In this document: one piece after another, positions 1 through 18,189 of the stretch
Layout: each line of letters opens with the position of its first letter
Position numbering within the stretch: position 1 is the first letter of the stretch
NCBI RefSeq assembly: GCF_036321535.1
Contig: NC_087449.1
Coordinates: 60,760,001-60,824,000 of the forward strand
DNA: 64,000 bases
Source of the DNA: Camelus dromedarius
Taxonomy: Eukaryota
Direction: 5' to 3'
Position numbers and translations under genes: made by a program
The notes under the pieces: generated by a model
The model's input: the letters and a program-made list of their open reading frames with translations, nothing else
Databases searched by the model: none
What the model was told of the DNA's origin: nothing

Positions 1-229
1 AGAGAGGTGAGGGTTCTGGGGGCTGAGCTGGAGACCCAGGAAAGTGAGGAAGGAGGGAGTAGGGAGAGGGCCGTGTGTTTGAAAACATGACAGTCCCTGA
101 TTGTCCTAGATGTTTCTCAGTTCTGTGTCAGAGACCCTGAGTCCTCTGTCTCCCTGGACCAGTGGGGCTGATGGTCTGAAGGTACCTGTGCTCAGACTTC
201 AGTGAAGTCTCTTCTATGTGTGTTAGACT

Positions 230-365
230 CACTTAGTCCTCACAGCAGCCCTGTGCTTACCCTAGCTTCATTTTATAGACAGGAAAACTGAAGTTCAGAG
301 AGGTCAAACAGCCTGCCCAAGGTTGCACAGCTGCTAAGTGGTGGGACCAGGACTTGGACTCAGAG
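230..365 (-). mobile_element. MIR SINE fragment
   Basis: ttttatagacaggaaaactgaagttcagagaggtc...cccaaggttgcacagc resembles the reverse MIR core. Confidence 0.75.
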
Positions 366-606
366 ACTCACGTTCAACTCACCTTCAGCTCTCACCATGG
401 TGCTGGTGGGGGAGGGGAAGGGGGACAGTGACAGGTTTCTCCTAAGCCTTCTGGGCCCAACCAGGGCTCAGGTACCCCCCCGCCCCCCCCCCCCAGGGAG
501 AGGACTCCTATGGGGTCTGCCCGCTTCCCACTGCTCGGCCCTCCTCACGGCCCCCGTCCGCTCGGTCACCTACAGGAGGGATGGGGCGCGGCGCCTCGGC
601 ACTCAC

Positions 607-752
607 GTTGCAGGCTGAGATGACGCCGTCACCCCCGGCGCACACCATGGTGTCCCTCACCGTGCTGCCCCACCAATCTCTCTGGCTGCACGTGTCGTGG
701 TCCACTATGGGCTGCAGGCCCTGCTGGAGCTCGTCGGCAATGGGGCCATTGG
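607..752 (-). CDS. CTRC: CTRC exon 6 ([49 protein letters not shown])
   Basis: AG at 754-753, GTGAGT donor at 606, 146 bp, phase 1 to 0. Confidence 0.96.
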
Positions 753-1039
753 CTGGCGAGAGAGCCGGTGGTGACCGGGGGTCAGCCCAGGCAGCCCCAG
801 CTCCAGTCCAGCCCCAGGCCTTCAGGGAACAGAGGACTGGGTGGGGCCGGGGCAGGCCCCGGGCGAGTTCTGGCTAGACTTGGTGGGACCCACATACAGG
901 CCCTTAACGGAGAAGCGAGACCCTGAGCCAATGGTCCCAAACTGTTAGGGGTAGGGACCCCTCCAAGGGCGGGGAAGGGAGAGCAGGCTGGAGGCAGAAC
1001 CAACCCGTGGAGAACCCTCAAGGAGTAACCACTGAGTCG

Positions 1040-1260
1040 AGCTGTCTTTCATTTGGCTTCTGGGCTTTTACCTGTCAGGCATTTCCATGCAGCGCTCTGC
1101 CCTTGGTGTCACCCACTTAAAGGTCTTTCCCACCCCTACATTTTCCAAGTATTGATCTGCATTTTCCTCTAAGTTTTCTGTAGTTTTGTTTCTTTGCATT
1201 TAACCTTTTAATTCAGCTGGAATTTATCTGGGATGCGGCACACCAGGAGACCTAATCCCC
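1040..1260 (-). mobile_element. old L1 fragment (approximate)
   Basis: T-rich tract ttttcctctaagttttctgtagttttg...tttaacctttttaattcagctggaattt resembles antisense L1. Confidence 0.45.
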
Positions 1261-1560
1261 CACCCAACAATGGTTAGTTTCACTTATTTAATAGTCACTC
1301 ACATGACACTTAGTGTGTGTCTGGCCCTGCTCTAAGCCCTTGACAAATTCTAATCCATTTAATCCTTATAACACCCCTTGTATACACCTGCTAGAGTGAC
1401 TGCCACAGGGCATGTGCTTAATAAATACTGTAAAGTTTAAGAAGATGTGAAGACATTTAGGCCAAAGGGAAAACTGGTGGGCAAATGCGGGCAGTGTATT
1501 TATTGTGGGAGCCACTTCCTCCAGGAAGGCTCTCATGATTTGCCGGGGGCGGGTACTCAC

Positions 1561-1697
1561 TCCAGAGGCGGCCCCAGCCTGTGACGTAGCAGGGGTAGTC
1601 CTGAGGCAGCAAGGAGCCCTCCTCCGGCAGGCATGCCACCTGGATGGTGTCACTCAGTTCCACAGACTCCGCCAGCTTGATAAGGGCAATGTCGTTG
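1561..1697 (-). CDS. CTRC: CTRC exon 5 ([45 protein letters not shown]), catalytic Asp
   Basis: AG at 1699-1698, GTGAGT donor at 1560, 137 bp. Confidence 0.97.
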
Positions 1698-2084
1698 CTG
1701 GAATCCAAAGTGGACGTGGTGAATGGCCAGGAGGGCTCTGGTCCCCCAAGCCAATGCTAAGAAGCCTGGGCTGTGAGTTGGGAGTCAGACCAAGTGTGAC
1801 CAGGGGTCCTCTGTAAACATCCTGGACCGCCAGCTTCTTACTGGCAGACAGAGATGCTTGGGGACAAATGATCCACCTTCTAACACTATCACCTGCCCCA
1901 TAGATGTAGCTTCTACCCCGACTTGTGTCTTCACGTCATGAAAGGCTTAACAGAGGGGACAAGCACAAAAGTATTCCAAGGGGTGTGCGTGAAATTAAAC
2001 TAAAGCAAATTGGAAATGATAATGATAAAGATACTTGCAGATGCAATTTTCAGTGTTCTCATGTTGCCAGAATAAAAGTGAACA

Positions 2085-2260
2085 GCCCTAGAGAGACTTG
2101 ATTTGATTCCTAGTTCTGCCACGTATGTACTGAGCTGTGTGACTTGGGACACATTCCTTAACCTCTCTGATCCTCGGTTCCTTGTCTAGGGCTGTTGTGA
2201 GGCTTAACTAGGAGATGGCATATAAATTGTGTATTGCAGGCATGCAGTAGGCATCAATAA
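2085..2260 (+). mobile_element. MIR SINE
   Basis: tctgccac...gctgtgtgacttggg...cttaacctctctg...gttgtgagg. Confidence 0.75.
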
Positions 2261-2543
2261 AGGTGAGTGCTGGCTCATCCTCTGGCTGAGAGACTTCAGG
2301 CAAAATACTGCAGGGGCCTGGGGGTCTTTATTCCCTGTGTACTTTCCAAGGACCCTTGACCAATGACGGGGGTGGGAGGGGTATCTGTCTCCACTTAGCA
2401 TTTAGCCGTTTTGGGCAAAGACGTCATCTGTTGGCTGTTTGGGGTGAGGATGGGGTCCAGGAACAGTCTCCAGCTCCGTCTCAGAGACCCACCCTTCTTC
2501 TGCGCTGCCCCAGGGGCCATGAGACTGTCCACTGGGCACTCAC

Positions 2544-2669
2544 CGAATCAGAAACGAGTTCCAGTTCTCATGGACATAGATGGTATCCACATCCACGTAC
2601 ACGGAGCCTTCCTCATCTTCCACCTCCAGGTTGTTCTTCCCCAGGCCCACGCGGTAGGTCAGGGTGTTG
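2544..2669 (-). CDS. CTRC: CTRC exon 4 ([42 protein letters not shown])
   Basis: TTCAG acceptor, GTGAGT donor, 126 bp; missed by the ORF track. Confidence 0.96.
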
Positions 2670-2959
2670 CTGAACAGAGCAAGGGGACCGGTCAGGGTGG
2701 CCTCCTGCCTCCACTGGCCAGGGGGGTGGACAGGGAAGTGGCCGCCACGGCGGGAATGGTTTGGGGAAAGGGAGCATTCACTCTGTTGACCCTTCCCAGG
2801 GCACGGGGTAAGGACCCTGCTCTTGGAGTTAAGTCCACTTTGACTCCTAGGTGGTTGGGCTCAGGCCTCACTTCCCTCGTCTGTAAGGCGGAGATAATTT
2901 TGGAAGTCCCCTCCCAGGGCTGCTATGGGAATGAACCAGTCCACATTGCTTCTGGCCTG

Positions 2960-3418
2960 TGTGATCTTGCCTGCGTTGCCCTCTAACCGCCTCTTCCTCT
3001 CCCCTCTCACAATCTGTTCCTGCCACACCGGCTTCCACCTGATTTCTCAAACATACCAAGTTGGCTCCCACCTCCAGGGCTTTGCATTGGCTGTTCCCTT
3101 CACTGGGAACACCCTTCCCCCAGACCAAAGATTTCTTATCTTAGTTCCTTCAGGTCTTTGCTCAAATATCCCCTTTCCAGAGAGAGCTTCCCCCGACCAC
3201 GTCATTTAAAATAGAAGCCCTCACACTTTTTATCCTCTTCTTGCCTTATTTTCCTTCATTGCCGCTTAATACATCATATATTTACTCATTTAAGGGTCTG
3301 TTGCTCTGCCTTCCACTAGAATATAAGCTCCCTGGGAGCACAGATTGTGTCCTCACTGCTGTGTTCCCAGGAACATAGTAGGTGCACAAAAAGTACTTGT
3401 TGGATGAATAAATGAGCA
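2960..3418 (+). mobile_element. L2 3' end
   Basis: tttgctcaaatatcccc...tagaatataagctccc...tagtaggtgc...ttgttggatgaataaatga. Confidence 0.8.
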
Positions 3419-3549
3419 ACCGAGTTACTGGATATGAGTAGCTTATTCAGCTCAGCGCCTGGAGTGGATGCCAGGTGCTCAGTGAAAGCATCGTGAGTTC
3501 CCGCTTCAGGTGATGGTGGGCTGTCTGTGCGTTCGCCCATCCCGTTCAC

Positions 3550-3647
3550 CTGATGCAGTGAGCAGCTGTGAGGACGTGACTGGGGCTGATCAAGGTGCCA
3601 CCGCAGGTGTGCTTCCACGTGCCACTACTGAGGTACTGGAGGGAGAT
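3550..3647 (-). CDS. CTRC: CTRC exon 3 ([32 protein letters not shown]), catalytic His
   Basis: CAG acceptor, GTGAAC donor, 98 bp. Confidence 0.97.
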
Positions 3648-3744
3648 CTGGAGGAGGAGGTGGAAGGGCCACATGTCAGCCCCCGGGACCCTCTCCCCAC
3701 CCCTCTCTCCACCCTGCCTCCCACACCTGCCGCAGCGCACTTAC

Positions 3745-3836
3745 CTGCCAGGGCCAGCTGTGGGGAATGGCACTGTCTCCTCCCACCACTCGGGCTGATA
3801 GGTTGGGCGGGATGCGGGGGACCCCGCAGCTGGAGG
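3745..3836 (-). CDS. CTRC: CTRC exon 2 ([16 protein letters not shown]|[15 protein letters not shown]), propeptide and mature N-terminus
   Basis: CCAG acceptor, GTAAGT donor, 92 bp. Confidence 0.97.
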
Positions 3837-4259
3837 CTGGGGGAGACAGGAGAGGGAAAGCACAGGTGAGCCGGGCTGGCATCGCTTTGGGGAAGAGACA
3901 GGTGGAAAGGGCGCAAGTTTGGGAGCTGGACAGACATGGGTTCAGCTTTCACTGTATGACTTTGGGGAAGACATTGAGTTCTCTGGCCTTAACTTCCTTT
4001 TCTGTGAAATGGGAAGAATAGCACTAACCTGGTAAGTTTGTCCTGAGTGCTGAATTAGATGATGCATGTATACAGCTTAGCAAAAGGCCTGGTGCAAAGG
4101 GAATGCTTAACACACTGAAGGGAAGTCAAAGGTGGCTGGCTGGTGTGTGAGGGCCCAGGTACACCTGTGTCCTTCATCCTCACCCCTTTTAGGCCATAGC
4201 ACATAGAGGGGTATGAGAATTGAATCCACAGGGTTCCAGACTGTCATAGCTGGGGAGCT

Positions 4260-4520
4260 GGGTGGAGCGGTCAAGAGCGTGTGCTGGGCAGTGAGACAGG
4301 CCCAGAGTCAGATTCTGGCTCTGCCACTAGCCAGCTGTATGGTCTCGGGCAAGATACTGAGCGTCCCTGAGCCTCAGGGTCCTCATCTGGAAAACGGATG
4401 CATTGGCAGACCTTGCCTCTCAAGGTTGTTGTGAGGCTCAAGTTAGCTCCTGGATGTCAAAGGCTTAGCACAGTGCCTGGCATGTAGCAAACAAGAACGG
4501 CCATTACTATTACTGTTGTT
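4260..4520 (+). mobile_element. near full-length MIR in CTRC intron 1
   Basis: gtcaagagc...ctctgccactagccagctgt...cctcagggtcctcatctggaaaa...cttagcacagtgcctggc...attactatta. Confidence 0.8.
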
Positions 4521-5045
4521 GTTATTGTTACCTGGAGGACTCTTAATCAAGTGCTCTCATTTGCCAAAACAGCCAGTGAGCTTTAGAGAGATGAGTGGCT
4601 TGTCCAGATCTGCTGAGAGTGAGTGACATTCAAGCCAAATTCCTTGATTCCCAGTCTGGGAGAAGACCACCAACATGGGGGAGCAAAGAATCCCCAAAAG
4701 AGAGAGGCCGATGCTGGGAAAGATAGGCCCCAGGGTGACCCAAGGTGAGGCACCTACTATGTCCTGGGGCTCGCTCTGTGCTTTCCCCGCCTCATGGCTA
4801 ATCCTTACCCTGGGGAGGTCAGAGCATCAGGCCCCTTTTGCAGATAAGGAAGCAGAGCTGCCCAGCAGGCAAGCAGCTCGTCTGACACACAGCTGGTCAG
4901 TAGTATCTGAACCCACACTGGATCCCAAAGCTCTTTCCTAAAGTCCTGGAGAGCAGGGGTCCCCTGCCCTGTCCTTGTCCCCAGGAGGCCAGCTGCTGGC
5001 TGCAGCTGGTCCCCGACCCACAGCTTACCTTGACCCACAGCTTAC

Positions 5046-5085
5046 CATAGGCCAGGAGCGCGGCAAGGACTGTGATGCCCAACAT
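5046..5085 (-). CDS. CTRC: CTRC exon 1 coding part (MLGITVLAALLAY), signal peptide
   Basis: AGCATG start at 5085, GTAAGC donor at 5045, 40 bp. Confidence 0.95.
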
Positions 5086-5109
5086 GCTGTGAGTGCTCAG
5101 GACTGAGTG

Positions 5110-5230
5110 GCTGTCAAGGTGGCCAGGGGTGCACTTATAGGCAGGAGTGGGGTCGGCCCACCTTGTCAAGGCTGAGACACCCCTTGGAAGAAACCTGTTC
5201 TGCCAAGGCCCTTTCCCTGACCTTGGGTGG
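5110..5230 (-). promoter_or_regulatory. CTRC proximal promoter: TATA (CTATAAG, 5140-5134) plus NR5A2-type CAAGG motifs and a TC-box
   Basis: TATAAG about 50 nt upstream of the ATG; CCAAGGTCA (5226-5218); TTTCCC (5212-5217). Confidence 0.75.
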
Positions 5231-7128: not shown

Positions 7129-7219
7129 CTTCTCCTCCTCCTCCTCCTCCTCCTCCTCCTCCTCCTCCTCCTCCTCCTCTCCTCTCCTCTCCTCTCCTCT
7201 CCTCTCCTCTCCTCTCCTC
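7129..7219. repeat. compound (CCT)n-(CCTCT)n pure pyrimidine tract, 91 nt
   Basis: direct inspection. Confidence 0.97.
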
Positions 7220-11124: not shown

Positions 11125-12705
11125 CACATAAGAATATAGAATTTTATCTTATTTTAGTTAAAAAAAATAATCGTACCACCGAATGAAGTAGTTTCTTCTT
11201 CTTTTTTGGTGAGAAGGGAGGAAAGAAAAAAAAAAGCAATAAGCCAAAAGAATAAGAACTTTTTATATTCATCTGTATAAACATATCCGCTAAGGCAAAC
11301 GCAATCCAGGGCCAAGGCTGCTGCACTGGGGTCAGTACCTCCTAATTCCTGCAGATTCTAAGGCCAAAAAAGTAAAACCTCTGCAAGTCCAACAGGAGTT
11401 TTGTGGACTCGTGGGGGCATTTTACTAAAATAAAGAGTTACCGAGTTAAAAAAAGCAGTGACGCTGTCACGACACGCACGGGAAGTTGCATAACTGTGGC
11501 CTCGGTGGCCGTTCACTTGTTTGGACTGGGGGACGGGCACAGCTTCACGACACGGCGACACAGACACACACACACACAGACACGCACACACGTGAGCGAG
11601 CACACTGGGAGCTGCGGAGGGCGGGGCCGGGGGCACAGACTTGTCCACGGCCTGTCTGGGGATGGGCCTGGGGAGGGCTGGGGTCCCCATGCTTCCTCAG
11701 GGGTGGGGGTGATAGGACGGGTCCTGTCGCTGGTGACAAAGCGGTCAGTGTCACTTGGGGAAGGAATGGCGTGAAAGAGCTGAGCCAGGTCCCCCGCTCC
11801 CCACCACCTGGGCCGTGCAAACCACTTAAAGCACTTCTTGGACGCCTCCTGGAGAATGGAGACGAGCTGGTTTCCTTCCCGATGAAGGGGCCAACCCCTC
11901 CCCTGCACCCTGCTCCCTCCAGAGCCCTGGGGACCCTCAGGCTGTTTGAGGTGGTGACTAGGGAGTGGTGTTTCTGCCCCCAGAGCCTGCCCTGCCCACG
12001 ACCCACGGAATGGCCGGCAGAGTCAGGGCCTGTGAGGTAGATTGGCACAGCTGCCCCCTCACCCTGCCTGGCTGCCCCAGAGAGCTGGGGTCTCCATGTC
12101 AGCACGGGGTGCCAGGGGCCTGGGCCCCCTGGCCAAGATAGAAGCCCCGCCTTGATTCCAGCAGAGAGAGGAGGCAGGGCCGGAGGAACAGGTGCTGGGG
12201 TGGGGAGCCCCAGTGCCATTGATCAGCTCTAGAGGGCCGGCCACAATTCTTGCCATCTGTCGCTCCCCCAGTCTAGGGAGGGGCTAAGGGCAAGTGGCCT
12301 CCGTAGGGGAGAGGAGAGGGAGAGGCTCAGGGGGAGAGGAGTGTGTGTGGAGGGTGGCACACCGGCAGGGGGCACCCTAGAGCTGAGAGCTGGGCGGGGA
12401 GCAGGAGCAGCTGGAGCAGGTAGCGGGCAGCCAGGGTGCCAGGGACGCAGGAAGGGCCAGGGAGGGCTGGGCCAGGCGGGGAGACAGCTGGTGTCACGGC
12501 CTCAGGAACAGTGGAAGGGAGTGGGGAGAGGCTGGGCTACTCTGGGAGACCCCTCAGCTGGCTCGTTCACAATCTGTAGCTTTGTAGCCTGGTCCCTTCA
12601 GACAGAGCCAAGGATCAGGCTGGCCTCCAGTCTCCCCGCCCTTGCCACCCCTGCCGGCCGGGTCAGGCACCGGGGGCCAGGGCCAGGCGGTCGGGCGCAG
12701 CCTCG
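11125..12705 (-). other. EFHD2: EFHD2 3'UTR (3' end inferred)
   Basis: follows the TAG at 12706; U-rich terminal block 11140-11290; variant poly(A) signals at 11143-11153 and a GU-rich element beyond. Confidence 0.65.
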
Positions 12706-12837
12706 CTACTTGAACGTGGACTGCAGCTCCTTGAAGGCCGCTTTCCGCTGTTTCAGCTCTTCCGCCTGCTTCTTCCTCTCCTCCTGCTCCGCCTTGATCT
12801 CCTCCTCGAAGCGGCTGGACACGTTGATGGCCTGGAC
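12706..12837 (-). CDS. EFHD2: EFHD2 exon 4 (VQAINVSSRFEEEIKAEQEEKKKQAEELKQRKAAFKELQSTFK*)
   Basis: CAG acceptor at 12839-12838, TAG at 12708-12706, 132 bp. Confidence 0.97.
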   Translation of the reverse strand, partial: VQAINVSSRFEEEIKAEQEERKKQAEELKQRKAAFKELQSTFK

Positions 12838-15145: not shown

Positions 15146-15293
15146 CTCCCGGAAGCTGAGCTTGCTGTCAAAGTCTTCATCCACTTCCTTGATCATGTTT
15201 TTCAGGCCCAGGTGGGTCTGGGGGGCTCCGAGTTTCTCCATCATCAGCTTTAGCTCCATCAGGTCGATGAAGCCGTCCCGGCCGGCATCGTAC
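15146..15293 (-). CDS. EFHD2: EFHD2 exon 2 (YDAGRDGFIDLMELKLMMEKLGAPQTHLGLKNMIKEVDEDFDSKLSFRE), EF-hand loops
   Basis: CACAG acceptor, GTAAGC donor, 148 bp; missed by the ORF track. Confidence 0.97.
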
Positions 15294-18189
15294 CTGTGGG
15301 TGCATAGAGACAGAGGCCTAAGGACACCCTGACACCTCCTTTCTACCAGTCAGAGGAGTCACGAGTGGGAGTGCAAGGAGCTGGGGAGCTCAAAGGGCAC
15401 CTCCCACCAACATGTCATCCTGTCACAGCTGGAGGGGACCTTGGCCCAGGCAGTGCCCCAATTTGTGGCCCAGCTACCGCCTGGCTACCTCTGGTGATGG
15501 GGAACTCACCACGTGGCCCGGTAGCCTTCTACGTGTTGAACAGTGCCAACTTTTGGACAAACCTACCGCACAAGGAAGCTGAAACCACAGCCCGTCTCTA
15601 CTGAATGTGACATGAACAGGCAGGGAGGAAGAACTCACAGTTCCATGGGGGTATGGATTGAGAGGGTGGGCCCTGATGTCAGAACTCACTGACCATCTCC
15701 AGGCACCTCCACGGGCACTTGAGGGACGTCCTGGCTCCATCTTTCCCCTACTCCTTGTCCCTACCCAGGAGGGAGGCAGAAGGTTCCATGTCTCAGGGCA
15801 GGATCAGAGGTCACAGGAGGGAGGGTCTACTTCCAGTTTTCTGGGAGGAGGGAGCAACTTGTACAGGGTGCCTGCAGCGAGCAGTGGGACCTGACTGCGT
15901 GGCTGGAAAGGCCTGAACAGTGATTCGGTGATGGCAGTGTCTCTGGCCTGCACACTTCAGGTCTCTTTTTCCTACCACCAACAGCCTGGCAGCAAAAGGG
16001 ACAAGGTGAGGGGCAGGGTCTAAATGCCTCTCTCGACCAGCCTCCTTGTGGTAAGAGCTTGGGTCAGAGCTGGCCTCCAGGCCCACCCCCTGTTGCCTGG
16101 AGCACATGGCACAGCAGATGTGGGTGCTGGGGGCACAGCCCAGCCAGCCCCTCTTATCAGGCTAACCAAACACCCACCCTGTTTCCTGGTGGGCGGGCGA
16201 GAGTCGTCTCAGGGTTGGCCAATGGGCCCTCTGAGCCTAAAGAGCTTCTTGTAGTCCCCAAGGTCTTAAACTGACTGGGTGACAGTGCTGGTGACAGTAA
16301 TATGACATAGAGGGGCTGAGTTCCAGAAACTTACATCCTGGAGACTTGGAGTTCCTACATAAACACCTATCTCCTTCCTATGCCTTCTTTATGGCTCCCC
16401 ACTTCCTGTCCCCCCATCTCTAGTTATACATAAGCTTCACATGACTGTGGACAAAAGCAACCGCTTTTTGAAATCTGTCTTTGTGCCAGGAACTTCATAT
16501 ACTTTATTTTACTTGATCTACTTTAAATAACCTTCTTTTATAATGGAGGCTCAGAGAGGTTAAGTGGCCTGCCCAAGGTCACACAGCAGTAAAGGAAGGG
16601 CTTCTACTCCATGTCAGTTGGGCTTATCAGCCTGCACATTTGTGGTGCCCAGCCCCCTTCCACATGTCTTTGGCTGCCAGCAGAACAGAGACGTCTGCTT
16701 GGAGCACTGAGCAGAGCATTTGTTCAAGGGGTATAAATAGTTTGCGAGCAAGTGAGTCAGTGGTTGGAAGTGACGCAGCACAGGGAAGACAGGTCTCTGG
16801 GAACCCTGCAGGGAACACGGGGTCCTGAGGCCTTTTCCCCCACCGTGGCGGGGAGGGGGCTGGAGTCTGGGCAGACGGGCCACGTGGGCAGAGGCCAGGG
16901 CCAGGGCGGAAGCAGACGCAAGAGGATGTGGTAGAGGGCTGTGGGACTCGGGAGGGTCAGGCAGGCCTACAATCCCGTGGTCCAGGCTCCACTTAGAGCT
17001 GGAGGGGCCCTGGGAGCGGGTACGGTGGAGCGCTGTCCCCCCTCCCCGGGATTCCATCTTTGGAGCCTGTTTGCCAGTTGGTAAGGGGCTAGTGGCTGCT
17101 GCATGACCTTTAGTGACAGGTACTGGAGCAGCCCGGTGAGGGATTTCCTGGGGCAAGTCACATGGGCCCCTCTCCTCATGCCCCCGAGGAAAACAAAGCC
17201 CCCGCCTCTTTCTGAACTTGGGCTCCAATGACGGTCACTGATGCTGAGTCGGGGCTGGAGCAATGGCCTGGGTTCCAGGAGACCGAGCCACTCAAGCTTT
17301 CAGCCGATGCTGGGAACCCCTGGTATGACGGTGACTCTTCTGTAGGGTGACTGCGAGGACCGAGGGGGTTCATACATGCCAAGCACTTAGCACAGGGCCA
17401 GCACATGGAGCTGGCTCCAGCAACGGCAGCTACCAGCACTATCCTGAGATGTCGCTATCTCTACTAAGCTCCTACTACGTGCCAGGTATTTTCTCTTGAC
17501 AACCTGTGTGCTCAGCGATCCTGGGAGGTCAGAGGTACGTTCCCACGTGACTGATTTGGGAAGAAGGGCTGCAGAGGTTTGGGCCCTGGCCCGATAACCA
17601 GCAGGCTAGGGATTCAGACCCCTATCCTTGCAAGTCCCACACTCTACTCTATCCACCGCCCACCTGCTCCTCCTGAGCCTCAGCTTTATTTACTGCTCAA
17701 GGGTTTCTCCCACAGCCAGGGGTGGCTCCGTTTCAGAGGAAGTGCAGATAAAGTGTCCAAACTTGGACAGAAACTTGGACTCTAGATTTCTCGGTCTCTG
17801 GCAGCTGCCAGGCCTGGCTGGGCTGCAGCTCAAACCGCGGCCTGAACCGCGGCTGATGCTGATCAAACATAAATCAATTACTGGGCCCGGGTTCCATCCC
17901 AGGTGGGCGGGCTCCAGGCCCCATGGGGGCAGTGCAGGGGCTGGCCTCAGGGCCAGAGGATCAATCACCAAGGGGAGGTGACAGAGGCGGGGAGAGGCCA
18001 GGTGCTGGCGTGGGAGGAGGGGCCCCCAGAGGTTGCGACACAGTTGAGTACTGTTCCCAAGAGACCCCCTGGGAGCAGATATCCACCACATGCCCTGGCT
18101 CTGATGTGGGTGGGCTCTGGGTCACTGGATCAGCCAAGTTCTAGGGTCAACCCTGGAGGCTCGTGCTCACAGCACCTCTGCTGAGGCTG

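What the first reader, a model, noticed from the sequence alone, without database searches (positions are those of the whole stretch)
5015..5046. Tandem duplication of the CTRC exon 1 donor creates a competing, frameshifting 5' splice site
Seen: the 15-mer gacccacagcttacc occurs twice with a 17-nt period (5015-5029, 5032-5046). On the sense strand this reads TAT G|GTAAGCTGTGGGTC AAG|GTAAGCTGTGGGTC. The downstream copy (AAG|GTAAGC) fits the U1 consensus better at -3..-1 than the in-frame one (ATG|GTAAGC). Using it adds 17 nt and shifts the frame directly after the signal peptide. Known: CTRC loss of function is a pancreatitis risk factor in humans. Inference: this could be a lineage-specific or allelic rheostat, or a partial loss-of-function allele that diverts transcripts to NMD.
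Basis: partly seen in the sequence, partly recalled or inferred. Interest (0 to 1): 0.72.

Follow-up and report, generated by a model that had tools for sequence, protein, structure and literature searches.

The report
Camelid CTRC duplicated splice donor
All camelids examined carry a fixed 17-base duplication at the first splice donor of the pancreatic protease gene CTRC, adding a slightly stronger out-of-frame donor next to the normal one, but the gene stays intact and how much the extra donor is used could not be measured.

Summary
On the minus strand the window reads CTATG|GTAAGCTGTGGGTC AAG|GTAAGCTGTGGGTC: two exact 15-mers, 17 nt apart, at the exon 1/intron 1 border of CTRC (exons 1-6 identical to NCBI's Camelus dromedarius chymotrypsin-C).

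It is neither an assembly artefact nor an allele. The same 17-nt insertion is in two other Camelus assemblies and in alpaca. At least 14 DNA runs from five studies hold every sampled word of the stretch. Pig, goat, sperm whale, raccoon dog, black rhinoceros and a fruit bat have one copy, with a clean 17-column gap. So the duplication is specific to Camelidae and older than the camel/llama split.

The downstream donor differs from the upstream one inside the 9-mer only at -2 (A instead of T). It scores about 2 bits higher and pairs with U1 about 1.5 kcal/mol better. Using it adds 17 nt and gives a stop in exon 3.

Camelid CTRC is still intact and constrained (omega 0.33, against 0.23-0.30 in other mammal pairs). 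The in-frame donor must therefore still supply productive mRNA.

Whether the second donor is used was not tested. "Lineage-specific" is supported, "allelic" is refuted, and the rheostat/NMD idea stays open.

The parts
5015..5046 (-). Tandem duplication: two exact 15-nt copies (5046-5032 and 5029-5015) separated by AA (5031-5030). Equals a 17-nt insertion relative to non-camelid mammals.
5046..5085 (-). CTRC exon 1 coding part (ATG 5085-5083; 40 nt; MLGITVLAALLAY + first base of the next codon)
5044..5045 (-). GT of the upstream, in-frame donor (ATG|GTAAGC); the one used in all annotated camelid CTRC proteins
5027..5028 (-). GT of the downstream, duplicated donor (AAG|GTAAGC). Its use keeps 5045-5029 (17 nt) in the mRNA and shifts the frame.
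5135..5139 (-). TATAA motif about 50 nt upstream of the ATG; likely core promoter, implying a short first exon (inference)
3745..3836 (-). CTRC exon 2 (92 nt).
3550..3647 (-). CTRC exon 3 (98 nt). It holds the premature TGA at 3592-3590 (codon 69) that is read if the downstream donor is used.
2544..2669 (-). CTRC exon 4
1561..1697 (-). CTRC exon 5
607..752 (-). CTRC exon 6 (exons 7-8 lie beyond the start of the window)

Best explanation
Shown: this is a real, fixed 17-nt tandem duplication of the CTRC exon 1/intron 1 border, specific to Camelidae. It arose after camelids split from other artiodactyls and before Camelus and the llama/alpaca lineage split. It left the original in-frame donor (ATG|GTAAGC) untouched and placed a second donor (AAG|GTAAGC) 17 nt further into the intron. 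The two donors are identical from -1 to +14, and the second has the better base at -2. Splicing from the second donor keeps 17 intronic bases, shifts the frame right after the signal-peptide exon and gives a TGA in exon 3, far upstream of the last exon junction. By the usual rule such an mRNA is an NMD target.

Inferred: camelid CTRC is still an intact gene under purifying selection, so the upstream donor must still produce the working mRNA. The two sites are only 17 nt apart, below the roughly 30 nt at which the intron-proximal site starts to win in duplicated-donor experiments. The second site is also intrinsically a little stronger. I therefore expect both to be used. The duplication would then act as a constitutive leak into unproductive mRNA that lowers CTRC output in all camelids without abolishing it. 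There is no evidence that this leak is regulated or adaptive.
For: - Structure.
- Gene identity: best solved-structure matches are bovine chymotrypsinogen C and human CTRC. Exons 1-6 are 180/180 identical to NCBI C. dromedarius chymotrypsin-C. EFHD2 lies upstream on the same strand, as I recall for human.
- Fixation and lineage: the duplication is in L001 and L002 (two Camelus assemblies) and L003 (Vicugna pacos). One copy is found in pig, goat, sperm whale, raccoon dog, black rhinoceros and Rousettus, with a clean 17-column gap.
- Reads: at least 14 DNA-type runs from five studies hold all 165 sampled words of 3540-5130.
- Donor strength: 7.3 against 5.3 bits, and U1 duplex -9.5 against -8.0 kcal/mol.
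- Constraint: full-length ORFs in all camelids. Camelus-Vicugna dN 0.016, dS 0.049, omega 0.33, with 10 nonsynonymous and 9 synonymous changes, binomial P = 0.019 against neutrality. Other mammal pairs give omega 0.23-0.30.
- Literature: for duplicated strong donors the intron-proximal preference only sets in beyond about 30 nt and is complete at 45 nt or more, possibly because U1 snRNPs interfere sterically when closer (PMC3413131).
Against: - No camelid transcript-derived protein fragments are in the protein collection.
- All annotated camelid CTRC proteins use the upstream donor, though annotation pipelines favour the open frame.
- Camelus-Vicugna divergence is only about 3%. The selection test is therefore modest, and an intact ORF by chance is not excluded (roughly 0.07 by my estimate).
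- Predicted RNA structure around the two donors changed with the stretch folded and does not separate them.
Confidence: 0.6

Rival explanations
1. Silent relic. The duplication is real and fixed, but the downstream donor is almost never used. Possible reasons are that the cap-proximal original site is chosen first, or that the G-run between the donors (TGTGGGTC) marks the 17 nt as intron. In that case the duplication has no effect on CTRC output.
For: CTRC is intact and as constrained in camelids as in other mammals. All annotated camelid models use the upstream donor. Each donor copy carries a GGG at +10 to +12, and from my own knowledge intronic G-runs favour the donor just upstream of them. 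The duplication has persisted through the camel/alpaca split without visible damage.
Against: The downstream donor is identical from -1 to +14 and better at -2. It also has its own downstream G-runs. Published duplicated-donor data show no built-in advantage for the upstream site at short spacing.
Confidence: 0.3
2. Strong hypomorph. The downstream, stronger and intron-proximal donor takes most transcripts, so camelids make only a small fraction of the ancestral CTRC amount.
For: The downstream site is stronger. With strong duplicated sites the intron-proximal one is generally preferred. A duplication of an exon-intron junction in human FGG gives mostly aberrant transcripts (PMC9052919).
Against: The proximal preference was seen only beyond about 30 nt of separation, and here it is 17 nt. 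Omega is 0.33, similar to other mammals, and all four camelid sequences have intact ORFs. This would be unexpected if the gene contributed little.
Confidence: 0.09
3. Assembly artefact or a rare allele of the sequenced animal.
For: Short tandem duplications are a known assembly error type.
Against: The same duplication is in three other independent camelid assemblies of two genera, with lineage-specific substitutions around it. All sampled words of the stretch are held by at least 14 runs from five studies. I estimate about a 96% chance that at least one sampled word spans the copy junction.
Confidence: 0.01

Closest known systems
Duplicated (competing) 5' splice sites in model pre-mRNAs (beta-globin and adenovirus constructs; PMC3413131 and the work it cites)
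   Same: Two donors of high U1 complementarity in tandem on one pre-mRNA, with one 3' splice site and choice between them made by U1 occupancy. The spacing dependence was measured there.
   Different: Those are engineered substrates, mostly with 25-200 nt spacing. This is a natural duplication with 17-nt spacing, fixed for millions of years, in a first exon, and one choice is out of frame.
Pathogenic duplication of an exon-intron junction: FGG exon 8-intron 8, congenital afibrinogenemia (PMC9052919)
   Same: A tandem duplication doubles a splice donor. Aberrant, frameshifted transcripts with premature stops result.
   Different: The FGG duplication is 403 bp, includes much exon sequence, is a rare disease allele and nearly abolishes normal splicing. 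The camelid one is 17 nt, includes at most 1-3 exonic bases, is fixed in a whole family and coexists with a selected, intact gene.
Natural and clinical CTRC loss of function (human pancreatitis-risk variants, PMC9122191; natural single-nucleotide deletion in Ctrc of C57BL/6 mice, Geisz et al. 2019, cited in PMC7366634)
   Same: Same gene. The predicted outcome of the downstream donor is a frameshift early in the coding sequence, like the mouse deletion.
   Different: Those are coding or expression variants segregating within a species or strain, with measured effects. Here the coding sequence is intact and any loss would be partial, at the splicing level, and shared by a whole family.
Alternative splicing coupled to NMD (unproductive splicing; textbook knowledge, not tested here)
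   Same: An alternative splice-site choice gives a premature stop more than 50-55 nt upstream of the last exon junction.
   Different: Classic cases are regulated, often autoregulatory and deeply conserved. Here there is no sign of regulation and no RNA evidence.

Membership tests
CTRC (chymotrypsin C) orthologue | Closest sequence relatives are CTRC rather than elastases or chymotrypsin B | tested here: met
   Exons 5 and 6 match bovine chymotrypsinogen C (1pyt_D) and human CTRC (4h4f_A) at E 1e-23 to 1e-24, against 1e-15 or weaker for elastases. Exons 1 and 3-6 are 180/180 identical to NCBI C. dromedarius chymotrypsin-C.
CTRC (chymotrypsin C) orthologue | Conserved gene order next to EFHD2 | tested here: met
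   EFHD2-type C-terminal exons lie on the same strand at about 12.7 and 15.3 kb, upstream of CTRC. The human gene order is from my own knowledge.
CTRC (chymotrypsin C) orthologue | Intact coding sequence under purifying selection | tested here: met
   Full ORFs in three other camelid loci spliced exactly to their annotated proteins. Omega 0.33, P = 0.019 against neutrality. Exons 7-8 of the window's own gene lie outside the window.
Small tandem duplication (lineage-specific insertion) | Head-to-tail copies that are absent in outgroups | tested here: met
   Clean 17-column gap in six non-camelid mammals. Two exact 15-mers plus AA.
Competing tandem 5' splice sites | Two GT donors that both fit the consensus | tested here: met
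   ATG|GTAAGC 5.3 bits and -8.0 kcal/mol; AAG|GTAAGC 7.3 bits and -9.5 kcal/mol. Both score above four of the five other CTRC donors in the window by the matrix. The matrix is approximate.
Competing tandem 5' splice sites | Both junctions observed in RNA | not testable with these tools
No camelid transcript-derived fragments in the protein collection.
Alternative splicing coupled to NMD | Premature stop more than 50-55 nt upstream of the last exon-exon junction | tested here: met
   TGA at 3592-3590 in exon 3 of an 8-exon gene.
Alternative splicing coupled to NMD | The isoform rises when NMD is blocked; usage is regulated | not testable with these tools
   Needs an experiment.

The most novel reading that the evidence does not exclude
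All living camelids constitutively divert a large share (a third or more) of CTRC pre-mRNA into a frameshifted, NMD-bound isoform through a fixed duplicated donor. The whole family would then live with a built-in reduction of the protease that protects the pancreas against trypsin. This would be either tolerated because of other changes in the trypsinogen/inhibitor system or selected as a dosage setting.
Probability: 0.3. Interest if true: 0.6.

Novelty: new member of a known kind. Interest (0 to 1): 0.4.

Why it matters
CTRC dosage matters for pancreatitis risk in humans and mice. A natural, family-wide change that may lower CTRC output at the splicing step would be a useful comparative case. 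It is also a clean natural experiment in 5' splice-site choice: two donors identical from -1 to +14, 17 nt apart, differing inside the 9-mer only at -2. One choice is productive and the other is not, and the arrangement has been kept for many millions of years in a gene that is still under selection. If the second donor turns out to be silent, the case shows how context can override a better consensus match. The practical consequence would then be small.

Tried and rejected
- **Laying reads.** So there are no junction counts and no direct read pile-up. Later look-ups used database protein ids of monkey, pig and camelid CTRC. Those proteins do contain the residues of the orthologous stretch, and I state that openly. 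Local scripts handled exon 2 only for translation and dN/dS.
- **Transcript-derived fragments.** I looked for camelid protein fragments that would reveal the junction. The 90% cluster of camel CTRC has only NCBI/UniRef members. A search with the first 100 residues found no camelid fragment.
- **RNA secondary structure.** Results changed with the stretch folded and were inconclusive.
- **Rescuing acceptor.** No AG at a compensating offset exists around the exon 2 acceptor (sequence; my inspection).
- **Tandem Repeats Finder.** It does not list the duplication at score 30. This reflects its length, not its reality.
- **Literature.** No paper on a camelid CTRC donor duplication was found. One search found nothing and searches were syntax errors.
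- **Earlier scan notes.** Only this same finding turned up.
- **Not run.** MaxEntScan and SpliceAI are not available here. The pig and raccoon-dog CDS could not be spliced exactly to their database proteins by my script and were left out of dN/dS. Their exon 1 junctions were still read directly.

Full report
**1. The observation**

Read on the minus strand, window 5085-5015 runs from the CTRC start codon through CTATG|GTAAGCTGTGGGTC AAG|GTAAGCTGTGGGTC.
- It is the only exact tandem match of 14 nt or more with a period of 14-30 in the 64 kb that is not a microsatellite. About 0.001 such matches are expected in random sequence of this size.
- Tandem Repeats Finder does not list it at score 30, because two copies of 17 nt score too low.

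**2. The gene**

- Stop-free stretches on the minus strand of 1-5200 carry serine-protease exons.
- Exons 5 and 6 match bovine chymotrypsinogen C (1pyt_D) and human CTRC (4h4f_A) far better than elastases or chymotrypsin A/B.
- A database search starting from a full-length CTRC found through exon 6 showed that exons 1 and 3-6 of the window are 180/180 identical to NCBI's chymotrypsin-C of Camelus dromedarius. The Camelus ferus/bactrianus protein differs at residue 6.
- EFHD2-type exons lie upstream on the same strand at about 12.7 and 15.3 kb. This matches the human gene order as I recall it.
- Exon coordinates: exon 1 CDS 5085-5046, exon 2 3836-3745, exon 3 3647-3550, exon 4 2669-2544, exon 5 1697-1561, exon 6 752-607. 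Exons 7-8 lie beyond the window start.

**3. Consequence of each donor**

- The upstream GT (5045-5044) gives the annotated protein.
- The downstream GT (5028-5027) keeps 17 intronic bases. The product becomes MLGITVLAALLAY followed by 55 out-of-frame residues, with a TGA at 3592-3590 in exon 3.
- In an eight-exon gene that stop lies far upstream of the last exon junction. By the textbook rule the mRNA is an NMD target.
- I found no AG near the exon 2 acceptor that would restore the frame (sequence).

**4. Real or artefact, allele or fixed**

- At least 14 DNA-type runs from five studies hold all 165 sampled 31-letter words of 3540-5130. With that sampling density I estimate about a 96% chance that at least one sampled word spans the copy junction.
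- More directly, the genomic loci of camelid CTRC proteins carry the same duplication: two Camelus assemblies (L001, L002) and Vicugna pacos (L003).
- Alpaca has TAC instead of TAT at the exon end and a C-to-T change at the last base of the second copy. The copies have therefore evolved independently since the split.

**5. Outgroups**

- Pig, goat, sperm whale, raccoon dog, black rhinoceros and Rousettus have a single copy of the form Y/C-G|GTAAGC(T/G)G(T/A)GGGTC GGGGACCAGC.
- The alignment shows a clean 17-column gap in all six.
- The duplication is therefore derived in Camelidae. It is older than the Camelini/Lamini split (about 16-25 My by my own knowledge) and younger than the split of camelids from other artiodactyls.
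- The simplest history is a 17-nt tandem duplication of A(T/C)GGTAAGCTGTGGGTC followed by one substitution to A at -2 of the second copy. The alternative is a 15-nt duplication with two filler bases. The data cannot tell these apart.

**6. Strength of the two donors**

- They are identical from -1 to +14 and share A at -3. Inside the 9-mer they differ only at -2 (T upstream, A downstream).
ViennaRNA duplexes with the 5' end of U1 give -8.0 and -9.5 kcal/mol.
- By the matrix, both score above four of the five other CTRC donors in the window.
- Predicted local RNA structure changed with the stretch folded and does not separate the sites.
[quoted passage not shown] That holds only when the sites are more than about 30 nt apart and is complete at 45 nt or more. 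The authors suggest steric interference between U1 snRNPs at shorter spacing (PMC3413131).
- At 17 nt neither site should have a positional advantage, so mixed use weighted by intrinsic strength is the expectation. This is inference, not observation.

**7. Is the gene still needed?**

- The annotated proteins of L001-L003 splice exactly from the upstream donor through eight exons. All camelid proteins are full length.
- Camelus against Vicugna: dN 0.016, dS 0.049, omega 0.33, from 10 nonsynonymous and 9 synonymous differences. The one-sided binomial P is 0.019 against neutrality. Camel, alpaca, goat and bat pairs give omega 0.23-0.30.
- Introns of the same gene differ by 3.0% with 1.9 indel events per kb. 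From this I estimate that a neutral 807-nt CDS would be expected to carry about 1.5 indels and about one nonsense change.
- The evidence for continuing constraint is moderate and consistent. The upstream donor must therefore still give enough productive mRNA, and a near-complete loss of function is unlikely.

**8. What could not be done**

Later look-ups used database protein ids of monkey, pig and camelid CTRC, which do contain the residues of the orthologous stretch.
- No camelid transcript-derived proteins exist in the collection. There is therefore no RNA evidence for or against use of the second donor.
- RNA-type runs that hold only exon words of CTRC do exist (X17, X20, X25-X31). They are the obvious next thing to lay.

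**9. Comparison with what is known**

- Loss of CTRC function raises the risk of chronic pancreatitis in humans (PMC9122191).
- A natural frameshift in mouse Ctrc is reported to worsen experimental pancreatitis (Geisz et al. 2019; title read in the reference list of PMC7366634).
- I found no paper describing this camelid duplication.
- The feature is a new natural instance of a known kind: competing tandem donors, possibly coupled to NMD. It is not a new mechanism.

**10. Verdict**

- The functional part is open. My odds are 0.6 for a partial leak, 0.3 for a silent relic, 0.09 for a strong hypomorph and 0.01 for an artefact.

Noticed in passing
window 12700-12830 and about 15200-15300, minus strand: EFHD2-type coding exons, with the C-terminal exon ending in ...KELQSTFK and then a stop, lie upstream of CTRC on the same strand. 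The EFHD2-CTRC gene order is therefore kept.
   Followed up: partly
window 4995-5014, minus strand (just after the second donor copy): CCAGCTGCAGCCAGCAGCTGG forms a predicted 8-bp hairpin about 20 nt downstream of the second donor in every fold tried. The second arm is not present in rhinoceros, bat, goat or raccoon dog.
   Followed up: partly
window 7132-7204, + strand: (CTC)n and (CTCCT)n microsatellites about 2 kb upstream of the CTRC start.
   Followed up: no
   Followed up: no
L001-L003 exon 7 (outside the window); proteins P0268, P0269, P0271: Camelid CTRC is 269 aa, one residue longer than in most mammals. It reads ...NCQAESSSIWEV (alpaca ...NCKAESRSTWEV) where pig has ...NCQAENGSWEV.
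   Followed up: no
P0179 (NCBI C. dromedarius isoform X1, 302 aa): This isoform reads on past ...YIDWINE into a different 40-residue tail. That looks like read-through of the exon 7 donor into intron 7. The green monkey entry P0013 has the same kind of tail.
   Followed up: no
P0270 (Camelus ferus EQB78631.1, 491 aa): This early annotation fuses CTRC to a second, elastase-like protease domain. It is probably a read-through model into the neighbouring CELA2A-type gene.
   Followed up: no
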